From assembly GCA_002269645.1 (NCBI GenBank), contig NIVC01001892.1, positions 62,001 through 126,000 on the forward strand: a stretch of 64,000 nucleotides of DNA, given 5' to 3'. The DNA is from Macrostomum lignano. Taxonomy: Eukaryota. Positions 5,938 to 57,481 of this stretch are shown here, piece after piece (within the stretch, counting starts at the first letter, position 1; each line of letters begins with the position of its first letter). Made by a program: the position numbers and the translations under genes. The notes beneath the pieces are model-generated. The model saw nothing but the letters and a program-made list of their open reading frames with translations, ran no database searches and was not told the DNA's origin.

Positions 5938-6522
5938 GGGCTCAAGCAAATCCCAGTCAGCCTCCTTCAGCTGGCTGATAAGATAACCTGCTGCAGCTGC
6001 TGCTGCTGCGGCTCACAAGCCAGCCGGATGTCAAACACAGATAATTTTGAACTTTTACGAGCTAGTAGCACCTTCAACTTCGACTTGAGCAGTTATCTCA
6101 GGCCCTGAGCCTCAGAGACCGTCAAGACTGCTCTCCGCCTTCCGCATTCAGTTTTACTTCGTGTGAAAATAAACCACTGAACGCGAAGAAAATAAGTATA
6201 AAAATCTATAAAGTTTGATTCGCAGAGTAAAACAATATAATTGTAAGAAGCCAGCAGAACTTTTGCGGAATCTACATGTATCAACACGGAAAAATAACAA
6301 ATAATTTCTGCATCAAAAAGTTAAAAAGCGCGAATGCTTTGATTTTGAGAATTCGAGAATCAACATCGCATGCTGTGAGCTCTTTTGAGTCGCTGTTACT
6401 GAGAGGGCGAAACACTTCGAATTTGTTTCGAAGTCGCCGCTGGCCTGCCAGGAGCCGTCGGCAAGCCGGTGCATCATCTCCACCACGCTGTGCGAGTCTT
6501 CCAGCTTCCACTGGTGACCTTT
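5938..6522 (-). pseudogene. Duplicated copy of the GGT 3' end: last-exon fragment 6430-6522 plus downstream flank
   Basis: 5938-6428 matches 19618-20108 (offset 13680; two substitutions seen, at 6221 and 6403). 6430-6522 matches 20254-20346 (KGHQWKLEDSHSVVEMMHRLADGSWQASGDF). The 145 bp containing the GGT stop codon are missing from this copy. Confidence 0.9.
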
Positions 6523-8157
6523 TCGTTTCTTTCCTTTTCTTTTGTTGGGAGGGCAACGAGGCAACGCAGTTCAACCACGCTGCCTACAGAGCGTGTGCTT
6601 GTTACGTTCGTAGAATTTCTGAATCGAGAAATATGACTGGTTCTCTCCTCGTCAGTGAATGCAGAATCAAATCTGACGAGTTGACAGCAAAGCGTAAGAA
6701 TCGCGGTGCAATTTTCAATTTCCTCCAGTTGCCTGCCTCCACAATTAAAATTTATAGTATCTGTGGTCGCGACTGGCTTTCGTGCATACCGATCTTAGGA
6801 CCCAGACAAAACTACCCAGTCCGGACTGGCTAGTCTGGCCTGGGCTTTATACATACGGCCCATTGAAAGCTAAACTATAGAAAGCACATTTCATCACAGA
6901 ACTTACACAGAATGCTCAGTCTATGTTTTATAATGACTCCGAAATGCATGCGCGTGCACACTACTTTTTCGATGAAGGCGCCGCAAGTAGTGCAGGGGAA
7001 ACTGGTAGAGCATCATGTAATTTAACCATCTCAAGTCTCATCATCAATAGTTATGGAAAACTGCATGGGAAGCCGGCTCATATCAAGTCTGCTAAGAAAG
7101 ACAAAACTAATTTACTATATTGAACTCAAGCGACACAAGATGAACGCACTATTGCATGTTTATTGTCGATAGTTAGCACCTACCTACGTGAATATCGATC
7201 AAATGGTGTAAAATGTAAAATGTCAAAGTGTAAAATAGAAAAGGTATATATGTACCAGATAGGATAAATCTGTACCACTCGCCACTCGTTATTGAAATGC
7301 ATTGAGTCGTTGCAATTTCTTAATCACTGCTATGGGGCCAGCCGCCTGTCACCGCTATCTCTGTTGCTGTGCTGCAGCTCGCTGATTTCTGCACCAATTG
7401 GTGCGGCCTGAAGTCGGCTGTACAGCGCAGCAAATCTGGTTGTTGCACAGTTGGCATTGTGAGCATCACTGCAGGTAGATTCAAGCCCGACTTCATATAC
7501 TTGTGCAGCAGCCACCATGGCATTACTTCTCCTCGTCTATGAAACTATCGTAATCATCTGGCAGATTGGCAAGATCTTCCGGCAAATTTAATTTGCCTCA
7601 CGATGTCTGGTCACAGCCGACCGAGCCCTCTTCACACAGTCAGGTAGATGCCTGGTGGTCTGTCTCACGGATTGTTCAACATCGTCAGCAGCCGATGGTA
7701 TGCCTCTGAATGGCTTTCAGTCAGTTAAAGATTTTGTGATTTACCTACATGTATTACAATAGTTTCTGCTTAAAACGGGCTTCGATGCTCACTACGGTTA
7801 ATCAAATTCCTTCATCGGAAAAGTAGTCGATGTGCGTATCTATTTCGGCGCAGTCCTCACCCTAACAACTAGCTGATTGAGCATTCTGTGTAAATTCTGT
7901 GCATTTCATAACAAGGCGAATTGTCCACACAGTTTTTAATATTAGCGTTCAAAAATGCAGACTTTACGAGTTTTGATCAAACTCGTATTGATCAAAATCA
8001 GTTAGTTTCATTACTTGGAGACAATGGGCCCGTTCTATAAAGCCATTATAGAAAGCCGACAGCTTTATAGTACGACCCCCATAATTTCAGCGGCTATAAT
8101 TTGTCCAAATGCCGTTTCAACTTGATTTAATTAAGACAGCTTCGAAGCAGCCATAAA

Positions 8158-8520
8158 GGGGGGGCCGTAGCCCAGCGGTAGCGCAGCTGCTCTGGTGTGC
8201 CAGCGATCCAGGCTCGATTCCAAGTGCAGCCACATTAATTTGGGGCTGAATTGGAATTTCGGCTTGGCTCGCCTGTGCAATTAACGGCCTTGAGAGCCAA
8301 CCCCCCAAGGCGCAGTGAAGTGTACATGCCTAACGATAATATAAAGTTAGGGCCGCTGTACACTCCTGTGTGAGTGTGTGCCTGCGTACGTATCCGCGCG
8401 CTTGTGTGCCTGCTCAGGGGAGTCGGCGGAATGGGCATTAATGCCTCTCGCCGGTTGTGTGCCAATGTCGCTTAAAGTGCGCCAGGGTGCACACAACCCC
8501 CTGCCTCTAATAAAAAAAAG
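8158..8520 (+). mobile_element. tRNA-derived SINE, family A, near full length
   Basis: A-box TAGCCCAGCGG (8168) and B-box GGCTCGATTCC (8211); body shared with copies at 14.7k, 18.5k, 19.1k, 31.6k; A-rich tail. Confidence 0.8.
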
Positions 8521-9664
8521 CAGTTATAAACCCCACACGGACGTCTACATGCACTGCAAGCCAGTCCAATATCCGCCAAAGCCATGTTTTTTTAAAAAGC
8601 TATAATTGTCAGAAATGCTCATTCTTTCATTCAATAAGGGCCAATTTTCGCAGTTTTTATGATTTTTAACGTTAAAATGCTAAATTTATTGATCAAACTT
8701 AGTAGTTTCATCCCTAAAACCATAATTTCAACCACTAGTTTGTCAAAATTCTAGCTGCTTCAACTTGTCCTGCGACAGCTTCGAACCAAGAAAAATGAAT
8801 TATCACACACACTGACCACCATATACATGTACATGCATATGCATGTCGACACAGAATAGTGATTATTGAAAGCAAAATTGCATTTTTCATTTAAGAAGGT
8901 CAATTTCACAGTTTTTACTATTCTTAACGTTAAAATGCAAACTTTATTGATCAAAATAAGTTATTATGCATCAAAAGAACCATAATTTTTTCAATATCGT
9001 CACAAATGCTGTTTTCAAACTTGACACAAGACAGCTATAGCTTTCGAGCGAAAGTCGAAAGAGCTGCTTGACCTTTGCAGAAAAAGCATGTTTTTTTATA
9101 TTTAATCTCGTTAGCGCGCATTGAGCAATTTCTTAACCAAGACACTACTGCATTTACCACCACGGAAGTTTTAGTAGTTTTAGTCTATTAGCTGCCTACT
9201 ACGCCACATTAGCAACTCCAACTAAGTAACCAAATCTATTTATCCCGCACCGCGGCTCTGCCGGACATTTAATAGTAGTTCGCGTGCTGAATATATAACC
9301 CCTCCAACCGTATTTATCTTACACCGCCTAATACATGTAATTGACAAATTGACAACGTACTAATATTAATATTTATCCTTCTTTGAAGCCCATAGCATTA
9401 TCTTGAGTAATTTGCCCGTGAGGCGTAAAAGCAACCAATCGTTCTCAACTCTAAGCGAGCTCTGGGAAACTAACGTTCCGTAATACGTAAATTATGGTGG
9501 TGGCAGCGATACGCTACTATTAGTAAGCATCAACGAATATCGACGTACATTGAATTTACGGTGTCTAAAAGACCCAATTTGAACGACCGTGCCTAACGAA
9601 GACCGCTCGAATACGATTAAAACACCTTTCCCGGAACTGAGGACCCGGCAGACGGAGTACACAG

Positions 9665-10737
9665 CAAGGACCACTGTATATACACAAGGACTACTCAACA
9701 ACTCAGGAAGTTACACTTGCGAATGGTAGAAATTCTAGAAAAAGCCGCTTGCTCCGCTGTGTCTATGGCAATGATCGAAGCCTTTTCACTAACAAACTCT
9801 CATACTCTCAGTGCAAGGTTTAAACAAAGTGAAGCAACAATTTTTGTTTTTCATCCAAATTCTTATCACACGTTCTTTTTGTTCAAAATGCAAATGAATG
9901 CTGCGTCCCAGGATGCAGAAGCAATTATATAAGCGGCGAAAAATGCACTGTTTTCGGCTTTCCAAAGGAAGAAGCTGAAGCTGATGCATGGCTCAATGCG
10001 TTGCCTGTGCAAGTATAAGGTAATTCATGTAACTTTTGACCCTAATTTCTCGTCCCTACTATAAAGATACGCGAGTGACTGTATTGCGGTGATTATTCAA
10101 TTTTATCTGTAGAAGGCTAGCATCTACATGGGAGTTGGGTTTTCAGCACAGGCTGCAGCGCAGTCAACTGCATGGAAGCAATTTTCAACAGGAAGCGCAG
10201 CTATGAAATCTCTGCAAGCCCTGCAGCTCATTCTCACATAGCTGCGCTTCAGTCGATCTGTCTACCGGTAAAATCATCTGATCCACGTCAGCAATTTCTT
10301 CTAGGCGATTCTGGGCAGCGTTGTGTTGACAGTTCCGTGCTTGTTTGAGAAAATATTCGAAAAAAATTGTGTGTGCGAGTGTCTCGAAGGCACTCGCACT
10401 CGATATCTCGAATCTTTATGTTCATCTGGATCTATTTTGCCTTATACAGTTGTATACAGAGTTCCATCAGTTGCATATCCTACTCTTTAATTGTAATGTA
10501 CTTCTTGTAGCGACTATATTTGTATTTTTTAATTATATATTCGTAAAAAAATATATATATAGCGAACAGTTTATGAGCACCTACCACTAGATAGGTTAGC
10601 ACTTGCTTCTTTATCGAAAAAGCTTATTGAAAAGCCATAGAAACAGCTAAAGCAAGCGGCCTTTTCTAGAATTTCTACCAATCGCGAGTGTAACGTCCTG
10701 AGTTGTTAAGTAGTCCTTGTATATACAGTGGTCCTTG
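9665..10737. mobile_element. Non-autonomous hAT-type DNA transposon, 1073 bp
   Basis: ~105-bp imperfect TIRs (9665-9769 / 10634-10737) starting CAAGGACCACTG; exact 8-bp TSD GTACACAG (9657-9664, 10738-10745); no transposase ORF. Confidence 0.88.
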
Positions 10738-10938
10738 GTACACAGGAGAAAATTTGTTGAGATTTGACTGCGGGACTTTCCGGCATAATTCGTGCGAACT
10801 CAACGCTGGCGGCATTTCAAATTTGTCAAGCCGCCCAACTTTCGAAAAAACTTTCTAGCTATCCCCACTTCAATTATATAGTCTGTCATTTGCTTCTAAA
10901 GCTTAAAAAATATTTATTTATATTTTCAGAACCTCAAA

Positions 10939-11718
10939 ATGGGCCGTAGAAAGATTGAAAAACAAACTTCTGTAAAGAAATCAAATAGAAAAACTATTGT
11001 CAATATGACAAAGAAGGCAGAGAAGAGATCGACCAGAGGGAATGGAGCCAATAAAAAAAAGCCTTCAGTAAAGCACTTGTCCCACTTCCTCCGTATCTAC
11101 AAAGGACTCGAGGACTGGCACATACCTATCTTTGCTGCAGTTAAGCAGTTCTGTGGGAACATAGCCACTGTGATGTACCCTGGTTGCGACAAACATCTCA
11201 CCGCTTCGCTCATCTTCGACAATGTGACCTACATCGACCTTAACTCCAAGATGCTGCCTTTCTTCAGTGATCCGGCTATTCATTCCTGGATTGAGGAGAA
11301 CAAGCAGTATACTGGACCGACCATCTACAATTTTGAAAACACAAACTTTGATAGGTTTGTTCCTGTGAATAATAAGCCCTACGACCTGGTGATTTCGGCA
11401 TCAGCTGGACTTGTCAGTAATTCCGCCTGCATGAAATACCTAAAAAATGGCGGCCATTTTCTAGTGAGCGATGCTCACTTTGATGCCAGAAATGCCTATA
11501 CAAAGAAGCATTTTAGTCTGGTAGCTGTCTATGATTCTGAAAGTGGGCAGTTGATCAGCGAGAAGAAATGTTTGGATGATTATTTTTTGACAACAGAGAA
11601 AAAGAAGATAACTAAGGTGCAGGTTGAAGAAAGTGTTTCGAAACCTAAAAATAAGCGATCATTTAAGTTGATAAAGGAACCTTCAGCTTGCTTCTTCTTG
11701 TTTAAGAAAATTAAATAA
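10939..11718 (+). CDS. Putative class I SAM-dependent methyltransferase with Lys/Arg-rich N-terminus, 259 aa, intronless CDS
   Basis: Clean ATG-TAA ORF outside repeats; VMYPGC (motif I-like), VTYID (acidic end of beta2), YDLVIS, YLKNGGHFLV; TTTTCAG acceptor 10 nt upstream of the ATG. Confidence 0.75.
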   Translation: MGRRKIEKQTSVKKSNRKTIVNMTKKAEKRSTRGNGANKKKPSVKHLSHFLRIYKGLEDWHIPIFAAVKQFCGNIATVMYPGCDKHLTASLIFDNVTYIDLNSKMLPFFSDPAIHSWIEENKQYTGPTIYNFENTNFDRFVPVNNKPYDLVISASAGLVSNSACMKYLKNGGHFLVSDAHFDARNAYTKKHFSLVAVYDSESGQLISEKKCLDDYFLTTEKKKITKVQVEESVSKPKNKRSFKLIKEPSACFFLFKKIK

Positions 11719-12654
11719 ATACTACTGCTATAAGCAACCTTTCTTTTGGTAAAACTTTATACTACTTATTGTCATAATTGTTTTTTTAATGATTAATAAG
11801 CGTCTTTTGCTATGATTTCATCGAGACATAATTTGTGTCTGTAACACAAAGACAATGAATTGTACTATAATGCAAAACAGCATGTAGTATCCTTTTGCGA
11901 TATGTCTACCTAGCCTACTTTGTATTTTTAAACCTCCATAAAAATTAACATTGTTTTGAAAGCTTAGAAATCTTTGATTTGAAATGGTCAGCTCATTGTC
12001 TTTGCAATTGACTTCATCCTGACAGCCTCTGCTGGGTGCTGGCATAGAAATTTGTGCTTTATGAAATTGATTGTTATATATCCTAATTTGTTGTTTGTTA
12101 CACTATTTGTTACTACTATTTGTTACATTTAATATGTATAACATTTTTCAAATGAATCCATAAATTTGTGCTTGTTAGCCTATGTGTAAATGTGTATTTC
12201 TTTTCAAGTAAATCCTGTTGGTTTATTAATAGCAATAGTTTTTTATGTTAATATAAAATTTAAACATTGCATAAAGTGTGAATCTTTTTTAGGAAAGCAC
12301 ATAATATACCTTTTTTAAATTATTTTTAAGTAAAATGACCCCAGTAACAAACTTTAATTGATGATTATCATTGTTATTTTATATATTATAATGCTCCTTG
12401 TCACAATGATGTCGTTGTTCTACATGTATATAAATCATGCATTAATTAAATTACTGCCATATAGTCTTATGTAGTGTTCCACCATAAGGGGGGTCCCTGT
12501 GCCGTAGCCATAGCTGTAAGCAAAACTACTGCTTATTCTAATTCTCTGTATTCTGTAGCCATAGGGACCCCAATATTACCATATTCCTGTAGTCCCCATA
12601 GCCATAGCCATAGTTTTAACAAAAAGTCTAGGAAATAAAATATTTCAAATCAGG

Positions 12655-12799
12655 ACATTCCTCCAGCCAAACTGACGTCACGACTCAACTGTGTGACCCA
12701 GCCGCTGCTGGTGGCGTTGCAGCAGCCGAAAGTGCAGAAGGAGCCGCCGCTGGCCCCAGCAGAGAATGATGAGCTCTCGAATCCGCCGCTGAAGCCTGT
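12655..12799 (-). pseudogene. Remnant of the last exon of glycine-rich-domain gene paralog B
   Basis: Minus strand reads GFSGGF...GASGGSFCTFGCCNATSSG then VVTSVWLEECP; homologous to 30705-31060 (CNATSGG...VVTPVELEECR). Confidence 0.6.
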
Positions 12800-14130
12800 C
12801 TACCCTCTACAGACACCTCTCTACCTCCACAGACACCTCTCTACCCGCTACAGGCACCTTCTCTCCCTCTACAGACACCTCTCTACCTGCTACAGGCACC
12901 TTCTCTACCTCCACAGACACCTCTCTACCCGCTACAGGCACCTTCTCTCCCTCTACAGACACCTCTTGTGATGATGGGGCTCAAGGGCTCGGTCCTTTCG
13001 TGCCCCTTTCCCAGACCCGGGTTCGTGTACTGACCCTGGCTGCGGTCCTCCACTGACACGCGTACGACGCGGTGTCCGTCGGGACTAGGCTGCTCGAGCG
13101 TACGACGCACGACAGCCTACAGACTCGCGTACGACGCAGAGCTGCTTGGGGTGGGACCGGCGTACGACGCACTTAATCCCTCTAAGGTGCCTAGTACAGA
13201 TGCAGACCCAAATGACGTACAAATTGGAAGGCTTACCAGCCGCGATTTCAGTCGTACAAGAAACAGCGCCGTCAGAGCAGTGGTGATCTCGATATCCTTT
13301 ACTTATATATTTGTCTAGCAATTCTGCGAGGAATAGCAATTCAGCAACCAACGCTGGCACAATCGCCGAGGAGCCACAAAGACGACGAGAATGGGGTCTC
13401 AAGGGGCTCTGAATAAATAGGCAGCAAACTGGAGGTTGAGGGCGCGGGATAAAGGCAGAAAAGGGGGCTTAGACATCAGCCAAGGCAACGCATGAGCTGT
13501 ACCAGCCAATCGCCGGGGCGCAGCACGGCAGACTGGGACTGGCAGCCAATCACAAACAGGGGCGGGGCAGCAAAGCTAACAAAATAATGGGGCGGGGTCG
13601 CACGCAGAGCATGGGGGGGGGGGTTGACTCAACAGAAAAGGTCTAGGCAGGGAGCGGAGGGGTACGCACGCGCAGAAGTGCAGGTGGGTGAGTCAGAAAA
13701 TATCTAAGGAGGGGGGAGGGGGAGAGGACGGCCCACTGGCCCGGTGCAGCAACTTAGCAAAGAGCACACTGTCATAACACATTCATGACACTCTCTATCT
13801 GCTACAGGCACCTTCTCTCACTCTACAGACACCCCTCTATCCGCTACAGACACCTCTATCCGCTACAGACACCTCTCTCTATCCGCTATAGACACCTCTC
13901 TCTATCCGCTACAGACACCTCTCTCTGCCCTCTACAGACACCTCTCTCTACCCTCTACAGACACCTCTCTCTACCCGCTACAGGCACCTACATGTATCTC
14001 TATCCGCTACAGACACCTCTCTCTATCCGCTACAGACACCTCTCTCTATCCGCTACAGACACCTCTCTCTATCCGCTACAGACAACTCTCTCTATCCGCT
14101 ACAGGCACCTTCTCTATCCGCTTCAGACAC
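12800..14130. repeat. 21-bp minisatellite (ACAGACACCTCTCTATCCGCT), interrupted by the 12967-13790 insert
   Basis: Units at 12800-12966 and 13791-14130; the same unit recurs at 29650-30065. Confidence 0.9.
12967..13790. mobile_element. Probable solo LTR, 824 bp
   Basis: Termini TGTGATGA...TCATGACA (TG..CA, 7/8 inverted); CTCT on both flanks; four CGTACGACGC motifs (13061, 13099, 13128, 13161); TATATA ~13303, AATAAA ~13413; two CCAAT boxes (13506, 13546) and GC boxes. TSD evidence is weak because the flank is CT-rich. Confidence 0.55.
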
Positions 14131-14545
14131 AAACCATCTATACAATACTGCTGCAGACACCTGCCATCTATACAATACTGCTGCAGACACCTGCCATCTA
14201 TACAATACTGCTACAGATACCTATCTATACAATACTGCTGCTGACACCTGCCATCTATACAATACTGCTGCAGACACCTGCCATCTATACAAAACTGCTG
14301 CAGACACCTGCCATCTATACAATACTGCTACAGATACCTATCTATACAATACTGCTGCTGACACCTGCCATCTATACAATACTGCTGCAGACACCTGCCA
14401 TCTATACAAAACTGCTGCAGACACCTGCCATCTATACAATACTGCTACAGACACCTATCTATACAATACTGCTGCTGACACCTGCCATCTATACAATACT
14501 GCTACTGACACCTGCCATCTATGCAATACTGCTGCAGACACCTGC
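14130..14545. repeat. 30-bp minisatellite (GACACCTGCCATCTATACAATACTGCTGCA)
   Basis: Tandem units; right part repeated at 18056-18310. Confidence 0.9.
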
Positions 14546-15208
14546 CATCTATGCTCCAGTCTTTCCTGCTCGCTAAGAGGGGACTTGTAAAGAAAGAAAG
14601 ACTGGGAACAGATCAGGATGTGCTGGGCAAATACGAGTAAATGTACAATGCACATGTAGCTTTTTATTTTTTATTAGAGTCAGGGTCTGCGCGCACCTAC
14701 CCTAGCGCACCTTAGGCGACTTTGTCTCAGAATCGGCGGTTCTGCACTACTGGCCACTCGGCGGACTCCCCTGAGCAGGCACACAAAGGCGAGGACACGT
14801 ACATGTACGCAGTCACGCACAGGCACACAGGAGTGTGCAACTTGACTTTATATATCTATACACAGATTTTATCCCTCCATCTTCTGCTCACAAGCCAGAA
14901 AGAATTTCTAACACTCTGGCCTCTGATCGGGCCCTATTACTAGTGTGAGGCTCACATCTCCGAATCTCTGATCTCTGTGCCGCAAATTATTCAAGACAGT
15001 GTATTTTATAGTCAAGCAAAAGCAAACTGGTTTAATTGACAAAATGAAGAGCAATGCATAGTTTGAGCGGGGCAGGGTTATCGCTCGAGCATTTTTCTCT
15101 GTCCCGTTGTTAGGCAACCATATCACCCCCCCCCCCAAAAAGCATTGCTGCGACTCTACTGTGTCACGCGTTCGCAGGCTACTGGCTTGGCCTTCGAACC
15201 TCAGCTTT
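14290..15208. repeat. Left copy of a ~918-bp direct duplication flanking a LINE
   Basis: Matches 18056-18972; the only difference seen is a C run of 11 versus 9. Confidence 0.92.
14655..14838 (-). mobile_element. SINE family A, 3' half (duplicated at 18421-18604)
   Basis: Reverse complement aligns with 8355-8520. Confidence 0.7.

Positions 15209-18972
<3,764 letters not shown>

Positions 18973-20223: not shown

Positions 20224-24912
<4,689 letters not shown>

Positions 24913-35296: not shown

Positions 35297-57481
<22,185 letters not shown>

What the first reader, a model, noticed from the sequence alone, without database searches (positions are those of the whole stretch)
10939..11718. Intronless, AT-rich, prokaryote-looking SAM methyltransferase with a basic NLS-like extension: candidate horizontally acquired enzyme
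Seen: a clean 259-aa ORF with Rossmann methyltransferase-like motifs (VMYPGC, VTYID, YDLVIS, YLKNGGHFLVSDAHFDA). Codon usage is A/T-ending, unlike the GC-rich GGT, GPCR and most CHC exons. The CDS has no introns or minisatellites. The first ~45 aa are very K/R-rich, and a TTTTCAG acceptor lies just before the ATG. From recall, unverified: the YPG..H / DL.IS..AG.VS / N..H.DA pattern resembles an uncharacterised bacterial/archaeal methyltransferase family rather than a standard animal METTL. Inference: a domesticated gene retargeted to the nucleus or nucleolus with an unknown substrate (nucleic acid or small molecule).
Basis: partly seen in the sequence, partly recalled or inferred. Interest (0 to 1): 0.7.

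Follow-up and report, generated by a model that had tools for sequence, protein, structure and literature searches.

The report
Orphan methyltransferase gene shared across animal phyla
This flatworm ORF is a real, transcribed gene for a very divergent SAM-methyltransferase-fold enzyme of unknown substrate; it was not taken directly from bacteria, but its closest relative sits in the zebra mussel genome and is too similar at silent sites for ordinary descent.

Summary
The 259-aa ORF at 10939-11718 is real. It is 100% identical to Macrostomum lignano gene model Mlig033944, which derives from RNA-seq. AlphaFold and Foldseek give a class I SAM-methyltransferase fold after a disordered K/R-rich 44-residue tail. 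No Pfam or NCBIfam model detects it, and the best PDB matches reach only TM about 0.5. The family has two branches. One is short stand-alone proteins in at least 277 bacterial and archaeal species. The other is a eukaryote-type clade that carries the basic tail (animals, choanoflagellate, diatom, dinoflagellates). The flatworm gene lies deep in the eukaryote-type clade, so direct bacterial import is not supported. The gene is patchy in animals and its tree conflicts with the species tree. The flatworm and Dreissena copies share 79% nucleotide identity, dS about 0.7, and 60% identity at four-fold sites, while all other pairs are saturated. Both copies are anchored in host DNA. This favours horizontal transfer between animal lineages or from a common donor. 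The conserved protein lies on one exon, but the TTTTCAG acceptor is used in cis, with a 5' exon supplied by a THAP-type transposon remnant. Substrate and nuclear targeting remain inferred; I favour a polyanionic substrate such as RNA.

The parts
10939..11718 (+). Main coding exon (259 codons plus TAA) of M. lignano gene Mlig033944; holds the whole conserved protein
   Evidence: 100% identical to residues 16-274 of PAA62880.1/PAA78070.1
10939..11070 (+). N-terminal K/R-rich disordered extension (residues 1-44; 16 K/R, 2 D/E); NLS-like or nucleic-acid-binding tail
   Evidence: pLDDT below 50 for residues 1-36; composition; present across the eukaryote-type clade and absent from prokaryotic forms
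11071..11715 (+). Class I (Rossmann-fold) SAM-methyltransferase-like catalytic domain, residues 45-259
   Evidence: AF2 pLDDT 80-95 across this range, strand order fits class I MTases; Foldseek
11176..11196 (+). Y80-P-G-C-D-K-H86: atypical motif I loop after strand beta1 (Y80, P81, G82 invariant family-wide; H86 at least 90%)
11224..11238 (+). V-T-Y-I-D100: strand beta2 ending in the family-invariant acidic residue, at the position that binds the SAM ribose in class I MTases
   Evidence: the role of D100 is inferred from general class I MTase knowledge
11383..11409 (+). D149-L-V-I-S-A-S-A-G157: strand beta4 and the following loop (motif IV region)
   Evidence: this region aligns to PDB 8k76_A SAM-MTase
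11467..11490 (+). S-D178-A-H180-F-D182-A-R: conserved [D/N]-x-H-x-D-A motif just after strand beta5; candidate catalytic or metal/substrate-binding centre
   Evidence: conservation; function inferred
11641..11679 (+). K-P-K-N-K-R-S-F-K-L-I-K-E: conserved basic insert between beta6 and beta7
   Evidence: (R240, F242, L244, E247 invariant in the eukaryote-type set)
9984..10019 (+). Exon 1 of gene model Mlig033944 (MHGSMRCLCKYK), followed by a GTAATT donor at 10020
10020..10929 (+). 5' intron (GT..AG) ending in the TTTTCAG acceptor at 10923-10929
9665..10737 (.). TIR-bounded insertion of about 1.07 kb (arms 9665-9753 and 10651-10737, 90% identical) with a THAP zinc-finger remnant at 9884-10018; absent from the paralogous locus; supplies exon 1
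11714..11719 (+). AATAAA overlapping the TAA stop codon; candidate poly(A) signal
   Evidence: sequence only; usage not tested

Best explanation
SHOWN. The ORF is the main coding exon of an expressed Macrostomum lignano gene (Mlig033944; a homeologous copy is Mlig010969). The product is a disordered basic tail of about 44 residues followed by a domain of about 215 residues with the class I SAM-dependent methyltransferase fold. It belongs to a family that no curated library covers. The family has a prokaryotic branch of short, stand-alone proteins and a eukaryote-type branch that carries the basic tail. The flatworm gene lies inside the eukaryote-type branch, in a subclade with Dreissena polymorpha and two dinophilid-type annelid sequences.

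INFERRED MECHANISM. SAM is held by the YPG loop after beta1 and by the invariant D100 at the end of beta2. Methyl transfer occurs at a centre built from H86 and the conserved [D/N]178-x-H180-x-D182 motif after beta5. That motif occupies the position of the metal/substrate ligands in COMT/TrmR-type enzymes. The basic tail, the basic core (pI 9.0) and the conserved KPKNKRSFKL insert point to a polyanionic acceptor. I think RNA in the nucleus or nucleolus is the most likely acceptor.

INFERRED HISTORY. The gene was not taken from bacteria by the flatworm. It spread among eukaryotes. The Macrostomum and Dreissena copies share a much more recent ancestor than their hosts do, which means horizontal transfer between animal lineages or from a common unknown donor. 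The gene has been under purifying selection since then.
For: Gene reality and expression:
- 100% match to PAA62880.1/PAA78070.1.
- The GenBank annotation of Mlig_3_7 is built from RNA-seq transcript assemblies (PMC5730564).
- Canonical GT..AG intron.
- Collinear paralogous locus with the same GGT neighbour.
- Omega is 0.28 between homeologues and 0.18 against Dreissena.

Fold:
- AF2 pLDDT 82, pTM 0.77; bacterial homologue pLDDT 93.5, pTM 0.90.
- More than 300 PDB hits at E<=1e-3; the 50 listed are almost all class I MTases, plus the structurally related spermidine synthases. TrmR is top for both models.
- 17 of 56 relatives weakly match Methyltransf_11.
- The family profile hits SAM-MTase 8k76_A at E=0.03.

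Family structure:
- 602 representatives.
- Named prokaryotes.
- Named eukaryotes: Dreissena, Dimorphilus, Mercenaria, Mactra, Ruditapes, Durusdinium, Effrenium, Diaphanoeca, Nitzschia.
- NJ tree and bootstraps: bacterial set versus the rest 91%; Mlig+Dpol 100%; all-bivalve monophyly 0%.

Horizontal-transfer signal:
- 79% nucleotide identity over 840 nt.
- pS 0.46, dS 0.70, against pS 0.81-0.91 for every other pair.
- 35 of 58 four-fold sites identical, p=1e-7.
- The Dreissena locus has no Ns and 34.5% GC, and its neighbour gene is bivalve-type: 67% identical to Mya arenaria.
- Mya gave no hit.

Charge features.
Against: - No biochemical evidence of SAM binding or methyl transfer.
- Motif I is atypical: a single Gly in YPGC instead of GxGxG.
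- The window protein itself matches no Pfam MTase model, even at E<=10.
- Fold neighbours are split between RNA MTases (TrmR, rRNA methylase 3mti, Bud23, cap N7, TrmI) and small-molecule MTases (NNMT, GNMT, PNMT, COMT, BezA, NodS). All are at TM<=0.53 for the query, so structure does not resolve the substrate class.
- Prokaryotic homologues have no conserved neighbours.
- The only RNA-linked fusion (Cid1-type nucleotidyltransferase in Effrenium) rests on an unverified 24-exon gene model.
- I could not inspect model coordinates, so the clustering of H86, D178, H180 and D182 near SAM is not shown.
- For the history: dS of 0.7 is not 'recent'. No vector or mobile-element boundary was found. The tree is NJ on 200 columns. 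Eukaryote genomes could not be searched at the DNA level, so absences rest on annotated proteins.
Confidence: 0.55

Rival explanations
1. Vertical inheritance. An ancient holozoan or spiralian gene, possibly as two old paralogues, was lost from most animals. The high Macrostomum-Dreissena similarity would reflect unusual constraint or slow evolution rather than transfer.
For: A choanoflagellate (Diaphanoeca) has a copy. Three spiralian phyla carry it. Two animal subclades could be old paralogues. Relative rates of the flatworm and mussel copies are equal (13 versus 11 unique changes). No vector was found.
Against: Four-fold sites are 60% identical between flatworm and mussel, but 17-43% for other pairs within the same family. 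The gene tree puts flatworm+mollusc against annelid with 100% bootstrap, and Dreissena apart from three other bivalves. No hit was seen in Mya or in any ecdysozoan, deuterostome or cnidarian genome among the named hits. GC3 of 0.48 contrasts with 0.91 in the neighbouring gene.
Confidence: 0.25
2. Same fold and history, but the enzyme methylates a small molecule (a metabolite, xenobiotic or natural product) rather than RNA or another polyanion. The basic tail would then serve another role.
For: NNMT, GNMT, PNMT, COMT-type O-MTases, BezA, BpumL and NodS are among the best structural matches. Prokaryotic homologues are solitary genes in variable regions next to GNAT, MFS-transporter and toxin-antitoxin genes. 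Patchy, transfer-prone distribution is typical of accessory metabolism.
Against: A basic disordered tail is conserved as a property across about 40 eukaryote-type members. The beta6-beta7 insert is conserved and basic. TrmR (a tRNA enzyme) is the top hit for both models.
Confidence: 0.3
3. Direct horizontal acquisition by the flatworm from a bacterium or archaeon, followed by addition of an NLS.
For: A large prokaryotic branch exists with the same motifs. The conserved CDS is on one exon, and its composition differs from the neighbour.
Against: The best prokaryotic-type relative is about 27% identical, against 45-78% for eukaryotes. The eukaryote-type clade is separate (91% bootstrap). The basic tail is shared with protists. 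The Effrenium copy has at least 6 exons in the domain.
Confidence: 0.04
4. Artefact: contamination or misassembly in one of the two genomes, or a decaying unexpressed ORF.
For: The Dreissena copy has an in-frame TGA in the N-terminal extension. M. lignano is cultured on diatoms, and a Nitzschia species has a family member.
Against: There are two collinear M. lignano loci with the same animal neighbour. The Nitzschia sequence lies in a different subclade. The Dreissena locus is gap-free, AT-rich like its genome, and flanked by a bivalve-type gene. The gene models are transcript-based. Omega is 0.18-0.28.
Confidence: 0.02
5. Pseudoenzyme: the Rossmann fold is kept, but SAM binding or catalysis is lost, and the protein acts as a binding or scaffolding factor.
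For: Motif I is atypical and no Pfam MTase model matches.
Against: Y80, P81, G82 and D100 are invariant across about 56 diverse members from three domains of life, and the [D/N]xHxD motif is near-invariant. This fits a conserved active site.
Confidence: 0.08

Closest known systems
Class I (Rossmann-fold) SAM-dependent methyltransferase superfamily; nearest Pfam models Methyltransf_11 and Methyltransf_25
   Same: Alternating beta/alpha architecture with a terminal beta6-beta7 hairpin. An acidic residue ends beta2. An 'LKxGG' motif precedes beta5. Probability-1.0 Foldseek matches. Weak Methyltransf_11 hits in 17 of 56 relatives.
   Different: The window protein matches no Pfam model at E<=10. 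Motif I is YPG[CS]xxH rather than GxGxG. The loop after beta4 is shorter. The family has its own invariant [D/N]xHxDA motif. Best TM-scores are only about 0.4-0.53.
TrmR/YrrM (tRNA 5-hydroxyuridine O-methyltransferase) and the COMT/CCoAOMT-type cation-dependent O-methyltransferases
   Same: Top structural hit for both the flatworm and the bacterial model (8k1f, 5zw3). Similar size (about 200 aa). Conserved acidic/His residues directly after beta5, where this group places its metal ligands (the latter from general knowledge).
   Different: 13-17% sequence identity and TM about 0.5. No Methyltransf_3 sequence match. Metal dependence is untested. The eukaryote-type members carry a basic tail that TrmR and COMT lack.
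NNMT/PNMT/GNMT-type small-molecule N-methyltransferases
   Same: Many high-ranking Foldseek hits.
   Different: TM 0.31-0.44 and rmsd 10-18 A over padded alignments. No sequence-level relationship was detected.
Documented horizontal gene or transposon transfers among aquatic invertebrates (general phenomenon)
   Same: Patchy distribution, a gene tree incongruent with host phylogeny, unsaturated synonymous sites between phyla, and a single-exon CDS.
   Different: No transposon, retroelement or viral context is shared between loci. Homology ends within about 20-35 nt of the CDS. IMG/VR has no relative.

Membership tests
Class I SAM-dependent methyltransferase superfamily | Rossmann-like alpha/beta fold with a seven-stranded sheet and a C-terminal beta6-beta7 hairpin | tested here: met
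   AF2 models. Foldseek: 312 and 389 PDB hits at E<=1e-3; the listed top hits are almost all class I MTases.
Class I SAM-dependent methyltransferase superfamily | Glycine-rich motif I loop (GxGxG-like) after beta1 | tested here: inconclusive
   The loop is Y80-P-G82-C-D-K-H86. It has one invariant Gly and is family-invariant but non-canonical.
Class I SAM-dependent methyltransferase superfamily | Acidic residue at the C-terminal end of beta2 (binds the SAM ribose) | tested here: met
   D100 ends strand 95-99 and is invariant in 56 diverse members.
Class I SAM-dependent methyltransferase superfamily | Binds SAM and transfers a methyl group | not testable with these tools
Pfam Methyltransf_11 (PF08241) | Score at or above the gathering threshold (21.2 bits) | tested here: not met
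   No hit for the window protein at E<=10. Among the relatives whose scores were listed, only P0142 reaches the 21.2-bit threshold (exactly 21.2); 17 of 56 members of A2 match at E<=0.1.
COMT/TrmR-type cation-dependent O-methyltransferases (Methyltransf_3) | Sequence membership and the metal-binding Asp/Asp/Asn triad | tested here: not met
   No Pfam hit. Structural similarity only (TM about 0.5). An analogous [D/N]xHxD motif exists, but its equivalence is not shown.
Prokaryote-to-animal horizontally transferred gene | Nearest relatives prokaryotic, or nested within a prokaryotic clade | tested here: not met
   The nearest relatives are animals and protists. The eukaryote-type clade is separate from the prokaryotic forms with 91% bootstrap.
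Prokaryote-to-animal horizontally transferred gene | Physically integrated in host DNA and expressed | tested here: met
   Collinear paralogous locus; transcript-derived gene model.
Eukaryote-to-eukaryote horizontal transfer (Macrostomum and Dreissena lineages) | Gene tree incongruent with the species tree, with support | tested here: met
   Mlig+Dpol 100%; bivalve monophyly 0% (NJ, 300 bootstraps).
Eukaryote-to-eukaryote horizontal transfer (Macrostomum and Dreissena lineages) | Synonymous divergence far below that expected for the host divergence | tested here: met
   dS 0.70; four-fold-site identity 60% against 17-43% for other pairs. No genome-wide control pair was available.
Eukaryote-to-eukaryote horizontal transfer (Macrostomum and Dreissena lineages) | Both copies lie in authentic host DNA (not contamination) | tested here: met
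Eukaryote-to-eukaryote horizontal transfer (Macrostomum and Dreissena lineages) | Absent from close relatives of the recipient; vector identified | tested here: inconclusive
   No hit was attributed to Mya arenaria among annotated proteins. Eukaryote genomes could not be searched at the DNA level. No vector was found.

The most novel reading that the evidence does not exclude
This is the founding animal example of an unrecognised enzyme family: a [D/N]xHxD-type, possibly metal-dependent, nucleic-acid methyltransferase. Its single-exon gene moves horizontally as a free-standing unit among aquatic eukaryotes (flatworm, bivalves, meiofaunal annelids, dinoflagellates, diatoms, choanoflagellates). 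It has even moved back into a marine gammaproteobacterium with its basic tail intact. That would imply a selectable, portable function, such as modifying a host or parasite RNA.
Probability: 0.15. Interest if true: 0.7.

Novelty: new member of a known kind. Interest (0 to 1): 0.42.

Why it matters
The gene itself is already deposited, as a 'hypothetical protein'. What is new is threefold. First, it marks a sizeable methyltransferase family (602 clusters at 50% identity) spanning three domains of life, with no curated model, no solved structure closer than TM 0.5 and no known substrate. Second, it gives a well-anchored candidate for gene transfer between animal phyla, a phenomenon for which clean single-gene cases are few. 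Third, M. lignano has transgenesis and RNAi, so localisation and loss-of-function tests are practical. If the substrate proves to be RNA, this would add a new modification enzyme with a very unusual phyletic pattern.

Tried and rejected
1. A TIR-bounded transposon enclosing the gene. Inverted repeats at 8357-8517 and 14667-14839 bracket the ORF. However, the upstream arm lies in a window-specific insertion (about 6240-9139) that the paralogous locus lacks. These are dispersed repeat copies, not element ends.
2. A shared neighbour pointing to a mobile element. The 666-aa ORFs beside the Dimorphilus and P0004 copies are unrelated and have no Pfam domains.
3. A viral vector. There is no relative in IMG/VR, and BFVD gives only generic MTase folds.
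4. More subclade members or donors in JGI metagenomes. Fourteen pattern hits were found and none encodes a relative.
5. Operon context in prokaryotes. Three annotated loci and 83 loci clustered by all-against-all BLAST showed no recurrent neighbour beyond closely related Chloroflexota MAGs and antisense ORFs.
6. Defence-system membership. Only sub-threshold generic similarity to mad2 and DrmMII MTase domains.
7. The Cid1-type poly(A)/uridylyl-transferase fusion in Effrenium. The junction spans a 2.7-kb intron in a 24-exon, 37-kb model, so I kept it only as a weak hint.
8. GGT co-occurrence. Both Salinispira and M. lignano have a GGT gene near the MTase. The flatworm GGT segment is only 25% identical to the bacterial one, so I treat this as coincidence.
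9. Expression tables. The gene IDs were not found in the held supplements of PMC5816591, and no supplements are held for PMC8629364.
10. Sequence-only PDB and NCBIfam searches with the single protein gave noise only.
It was repeated with 9 sequences.
Full report
OBSERVATION. The window holds a 259-codon ATG-to-TAA ORF at 10939-11718 on the + strand. In 500 shuffles of the surrounding 4 kb, the longest ATG-ORF averaged 80 aa and never exceeded 175 aa. The first 44 residues contain 16 K/R and 2 D/E. TTTTCAG lies at 10923-10929. No tandem repeat touches the CDS, and minisatellites begin at 12795. GC3 is 0.48, against 0.91 for the neighbouring gamma-glutamyl-transpeptidase coding segment at 22292-23197.

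IDENTITY OF THE LOCUS. The ORF is 100% identical over all 259 residues to GenBank PAA62880.1/PAA78070.1 (Macrostomum lignano Mlig033944.g1/g2, 274 aa). It is 97% identical to PAA80586.1 (Mlig010969.g1). The 15 extra residues of the 274-aa model come from a 5' exon at 9984-10019, followed by GTAATT. The rest starts at 10930, directly after TTTTCAG. According to PMC5730564, the GenBank annotation of assembly Mlig_3_7 is derived from RNA-seq-based, genome-guided transcript assemblies, so these models are themselves transcript evidence. SL trans-splicing is common in this species, with a [T/C]TNCAG acceptor motif (PMC8629364). Whether the same acceptor also receives the spliced leader could not be checked.

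The second M. lignano locus (L003) is collinear with the window over many kilobases at about 91% identity and has the same GGT neighbour. The two CDSs differ by dS 0.05 and omega 0.28. The gene is therefore integrated, duplicated with the genome, and under constraint.

WHAT THE PROTEIN IS. Sequence libraries are silent on it. There is no Pfam hit even at E<=10, only noise in NCBIfam, and only noise against PDB sequences. AlphaFold2 with the 17-sequence family alignment gives pLDDT 82 and pTM 0.77. Residues 1-36 are disordered, and the domain has alternating strands and helices ending in a beta-hairpin. Foldseek finds 312 PDB chains at E<=1e-3, and the listed top hits are almost all class I SAM-dependent methyltransferases: TrmR, BezA, BpumL, GNMT, NNMT, cap guanine-N7 MTase and an rRNA methylase, with spermidine synthase, a structurally related non-MTase, also among them. 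All are at probability 1.0, but with only 9-17% identity and TM 0.3-0.43. The viral library gives the same generic picture.

An independent model of a spirochaete homologue, built from 30 sequences, reaches pLDDT 93.5 and pTM 0.90. It again puts TrmR first, followed by NNMT, COMT-type O-MTases, NodS and spermidine synthase, with TM no higher than 0.53. At the sequence level, 17 of 56 relatives weakly match Methyltransf_11. A family profile reaches one PDB SAM-MTase (8k76_A, E=0.03) over the beta4-beta5 region. The fold class is therefore established, but no curated family or solved structure is a close relative.

Residues conserved from bacteria to animals are Y80, P81, G82, D100 and F255 (invariant). 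H86, S90, Y98, D149, S153, A156, G157, C164, G172, D182 and A183 are conserved in at least 90% of members. D100 ends strand beta2, which is the SAM-ribose-binding position in class I MTases (general knowledge). The motif after beta5 reads S-D-A-H-F-D-A-R in eukaryote-type members and N-N-S-H-G-D-A in prokaryotic ones, giving a consensus of [D/N]-x-H-x-D-A.

THE FAMILY. An exhaustive profile search of 1.84 billion cluster representatives finds 602 proteins at E<=1e-3 and 105 at E<=1e-30. Members of about 205-215 aa lack any N-terminal extension. Where they are named, they come from Spirochaetota and Chitinivibrionales. A scan of GTDB species representatives finds 277 genomes across many phyla: Spirochaetota, Chloroflexota, Atribacterota, Bacteroidota, Actinomycetota, Fibrobacterota, Acidobacteriota and Gammaproteobacteria. 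Archaea are included too: Methanosarcinales, Bathyarchaeia, Thermoplasmatota, Promethearchaeota and Micrarchaeota. These prokaryotic genes are solitary. Three annotated neighbourhoods differ completely, and clustering all ORFs from 83 loci reveals no recurrent partner.

Longer members carry K/R-rich extensions. Where named, they are eukaryotic: the bivalves Dreissena, Mercenaria, Mactra and Ruditapes; the annelid Dimorphilus; a Calanus transcriptome; the dinoflagellates Durusdinium and Effrenium; the choanoflagellate Diaphanoeca; and the diatom Nitzschia. A midpoint-rooted NJ tree of 133 domains separates extension-bearing forms from the short forms. In a 54-taxon subset the prokaryotic set is split from the rest in 91% of 300 bootstraps. 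Among 40 eukaryote-type members, the extension has a median length of 44 aa and a median net charge of +8.5.

WAS IT ACQUIRED HORIZONTALLY, AND FROM WHOM? A direct prokaryotic source is not supported. A spirochaete homologue is 27% identical to the window protein, while Durusdinium, Diaphanoeca and animal copies are 45-78% identical. The flatworm also sits deep inside the eukaryote-type clade. The Effrenium copy has at least six exons within the domain, which shows long residence in eukaryotes.

The pattern within animals, however, is not vertical:
- The conserved CDS is a single exon in M. lignano (both loci), Dreissena, Dimorphilus, Mercenaria and the P0004 contig.
- The gene tree gives (Macrostomum, Dreissena) at 100% and adds the dinophilid-type pair at 100%. 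Mercenaria, Ruditapes and Mactra fall elsewhere, and monophyly of the bivalve copies has 0% support.
- The window and the Dreissena locus share 79% nucleotide identity over 840 nt. The match extends about 20 nt upstream of the ATG, including the acceptor-like TTTTAG, and about 35 nt past the stop.
- Nei-Gojobori pS is 0.46 (dS 0.70, omega 0.18) for this pair, against 0.81-0.91 for every other inter-species pair, including Dreissena versus Mercenaria.
- At four-fold degenerate sites under identical amino acids, 35 of 58 are identical. About 27% would be expected (p=1e-7), and other pairs show 17-43%.

Contamination is unlikely on either side. The flatworm copy lies in two collinear loci. The Dreissena locus is 20.7 kb without Ns at 34.5% GC. 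The gene 4.4 kb downstream of it is most similar to Mya arenaria HDAC6-like protein (67% identity over 97% of the query), followed by other molluscs. No hit in the family searches was attributed to Mya.

The Dreissena copy has an in-frame TGA within the N-terminal extension. An annotated upstream multi-exon model ends exactly at that stop. Its core, however, evolves no faster than the flatworm's (13 versus 11 lineage-specific changes). I conclude that the Macrostomum and Dreissena copies most probably share a non-vertical, post-phylum-divergence ancestor. I put this at about two chances in three. The direction and the vector are unknown. Old paralogy with extreme loss, plus unexplained synonymous constraint, is the main alternative.

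HOW IT PROBABLY WORKS. Shown: the fold, the conserved residues, the disordered basic tail, the basic core (pI 9.0; whole protein 9.7), and the conserved basic KPKNKRSFKL insert between beta6 and beta7. Inferred: SAM binds through the YPG loop and D100, and catalysis or acceptor binding uses H86 and the [D/N]xHxD motif. That motif lies where COMT/TrmR-type enzymes place their metal ligands (general knowledge), and TrmR is the top structural hit for both models. The basic tail and insert favour a polyanionic acceptor, and I think RNA in the nucleus or nucleolus is the most likely. A small-molecule acceptor is a serious rival, because half of the structural neighbours are small-molecule enzymes and the prokaryotic genes sit in accessory regions. 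The one suggestive fusion, a Cid1-type nucleotidyltransferase joined to this domain in Effrenium, depends on an unverified gene model.

COMPARISON AND NOVELTY. The protein works like a class I SAM-MTase, and on fold it belongs to that superfamily. It fails the membership test for Methyltransf_11 and every other Pfam family, and it has a non-canonical motif I. The gene is already in GenBank as a hypothetical protein, and UniRef's automatic name is 'Class I SAM-dependent methyltransferase'. I therefore rate the finding as a new member of a known kind. Two points deserve attention: the family is uncurated and uncharacterised, and the flatworm-mussel pair is a candidate for inter-phylum transfer.

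SIDE OBSERVATIONS. Exon 1 of this locus lies inside a 1.07-kb insertion bounded by 89-nt inverted repeats that are 90% identical. The insertion is absent from the paralogous locus and carries a THAP zinc-finger remnant that scores above Pfam's threshold. A P-element/THAP-type transposon fragment has therefore been exonised. Separately, a marine gammaproteobacterial contig with an aspS-yebC-ruvC-ruvA neighbourhood carries a eukaryote-type copy with a 52-aa K-rich tail. Its GC is 33%, against 40-44% for the neighbouring genes. This looks like a eukaryote-to-bacterium transfer.

Noticed in passing
window 9665-10737: A TIR-bounded insertion of about 1.07 kb (arms 9665-9753 and 10651-10737, 90% identical), absent from the paralogous M. 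lignano locus. It contains a THAP zinc-finger remnant at 9884-10018 (Pfam THAP 29 bits, above the 23.9 cutoff) and supplies the 5' coding exon (9984-10019) of gene model Mlig033944. This is an exonised P-element/THAP-type transposon fragment.
   Followed up: partly
L014 1010-1900 (TARA contig, Gammaproteobacteria MAG; protein P0041/P0300): A truly bacterial contig (aspS, yebC, ruvC, ruvA neighbours) carries a eukaryote-type family member with a 52-aa lysine-rich N-terminal tail. The gene's GC is 0.33, against 0.40-0.44 for its neighbours. This is probably a eukaryote-to-bacterium transfer, reminiscent of effectors of intracellular bacteria.
   Followed up: partly
L001 9877-9973 (Dreissena polymorpha): The mussel copy keeps the N-terminal extension at the DNA level, but an in-frame TGA interrupts it. 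An annotated upstream multi-exon gene model (122 aa) ends exactly at that stop, so the conserved acceptor-like TTTTAG seems to be used there too.
   Followed up: partly
L010 (Effrenium voratum, protein P0037): A gene model fuses a Cid1-family poly(A)/uridylyl-transferase (PF22600 plus PF03828) to this methyltransferase domain. The domain is split into at least 6 exons. The fusion junction spans a 2.7-kb intron and is unverified.
   Followed up: partly
window 6240-9139 and 8357-8517 / 14667-14839: A window-specific insertion of about 2.9 kb relative to the paralogous locus contains an inverted copy of a dispersed repeat of about 160 nt that also lies downstream of the gene. These are not element ends around the gene.
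   Followed up: partly
window 15303-18080 (-) and 41947-45657 (-): Two retroelement ORFs. One is a 925-aa RT plus RNase H ORF. The other is a 1236-aa LINE-type ORF with endonuclease, RT and RNase H domains, followed by a 488-aa ORF at 45654-47120.
   Followed up: no
window 12795-12966 and 13791-14552: Minisatellite arrays (periods 21/42, 23/121 and 30/87/117 nt) about 1-3 kb downstream of the gene. They create long spurious ORFs such as 13785-14576.
   Followed up: no
window 22292-23197 (-); L007 9573-11201: A GGT gene lies within a few kb of the methyltransferase in both M. lignano and the spirochaete Salinispira pacifica. The flatworm segment is only 25% identical to the bacterial GGT and has GC3 of 0.91, so this is most likely coincidence.
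   Followed up: partly
L011 (Logan SRR23372228 contig, protein P0004): A 9.4-kb contig at 22% GC, densely packed with intron-free ORFs (LRR-like proteins and a TRP-channel-like fragment), carries the closest relative of the Dimorphilus copy (78% nucleotide identity). It is probably another dinophilid annelid with a very compact genome.
   Followed up: partly
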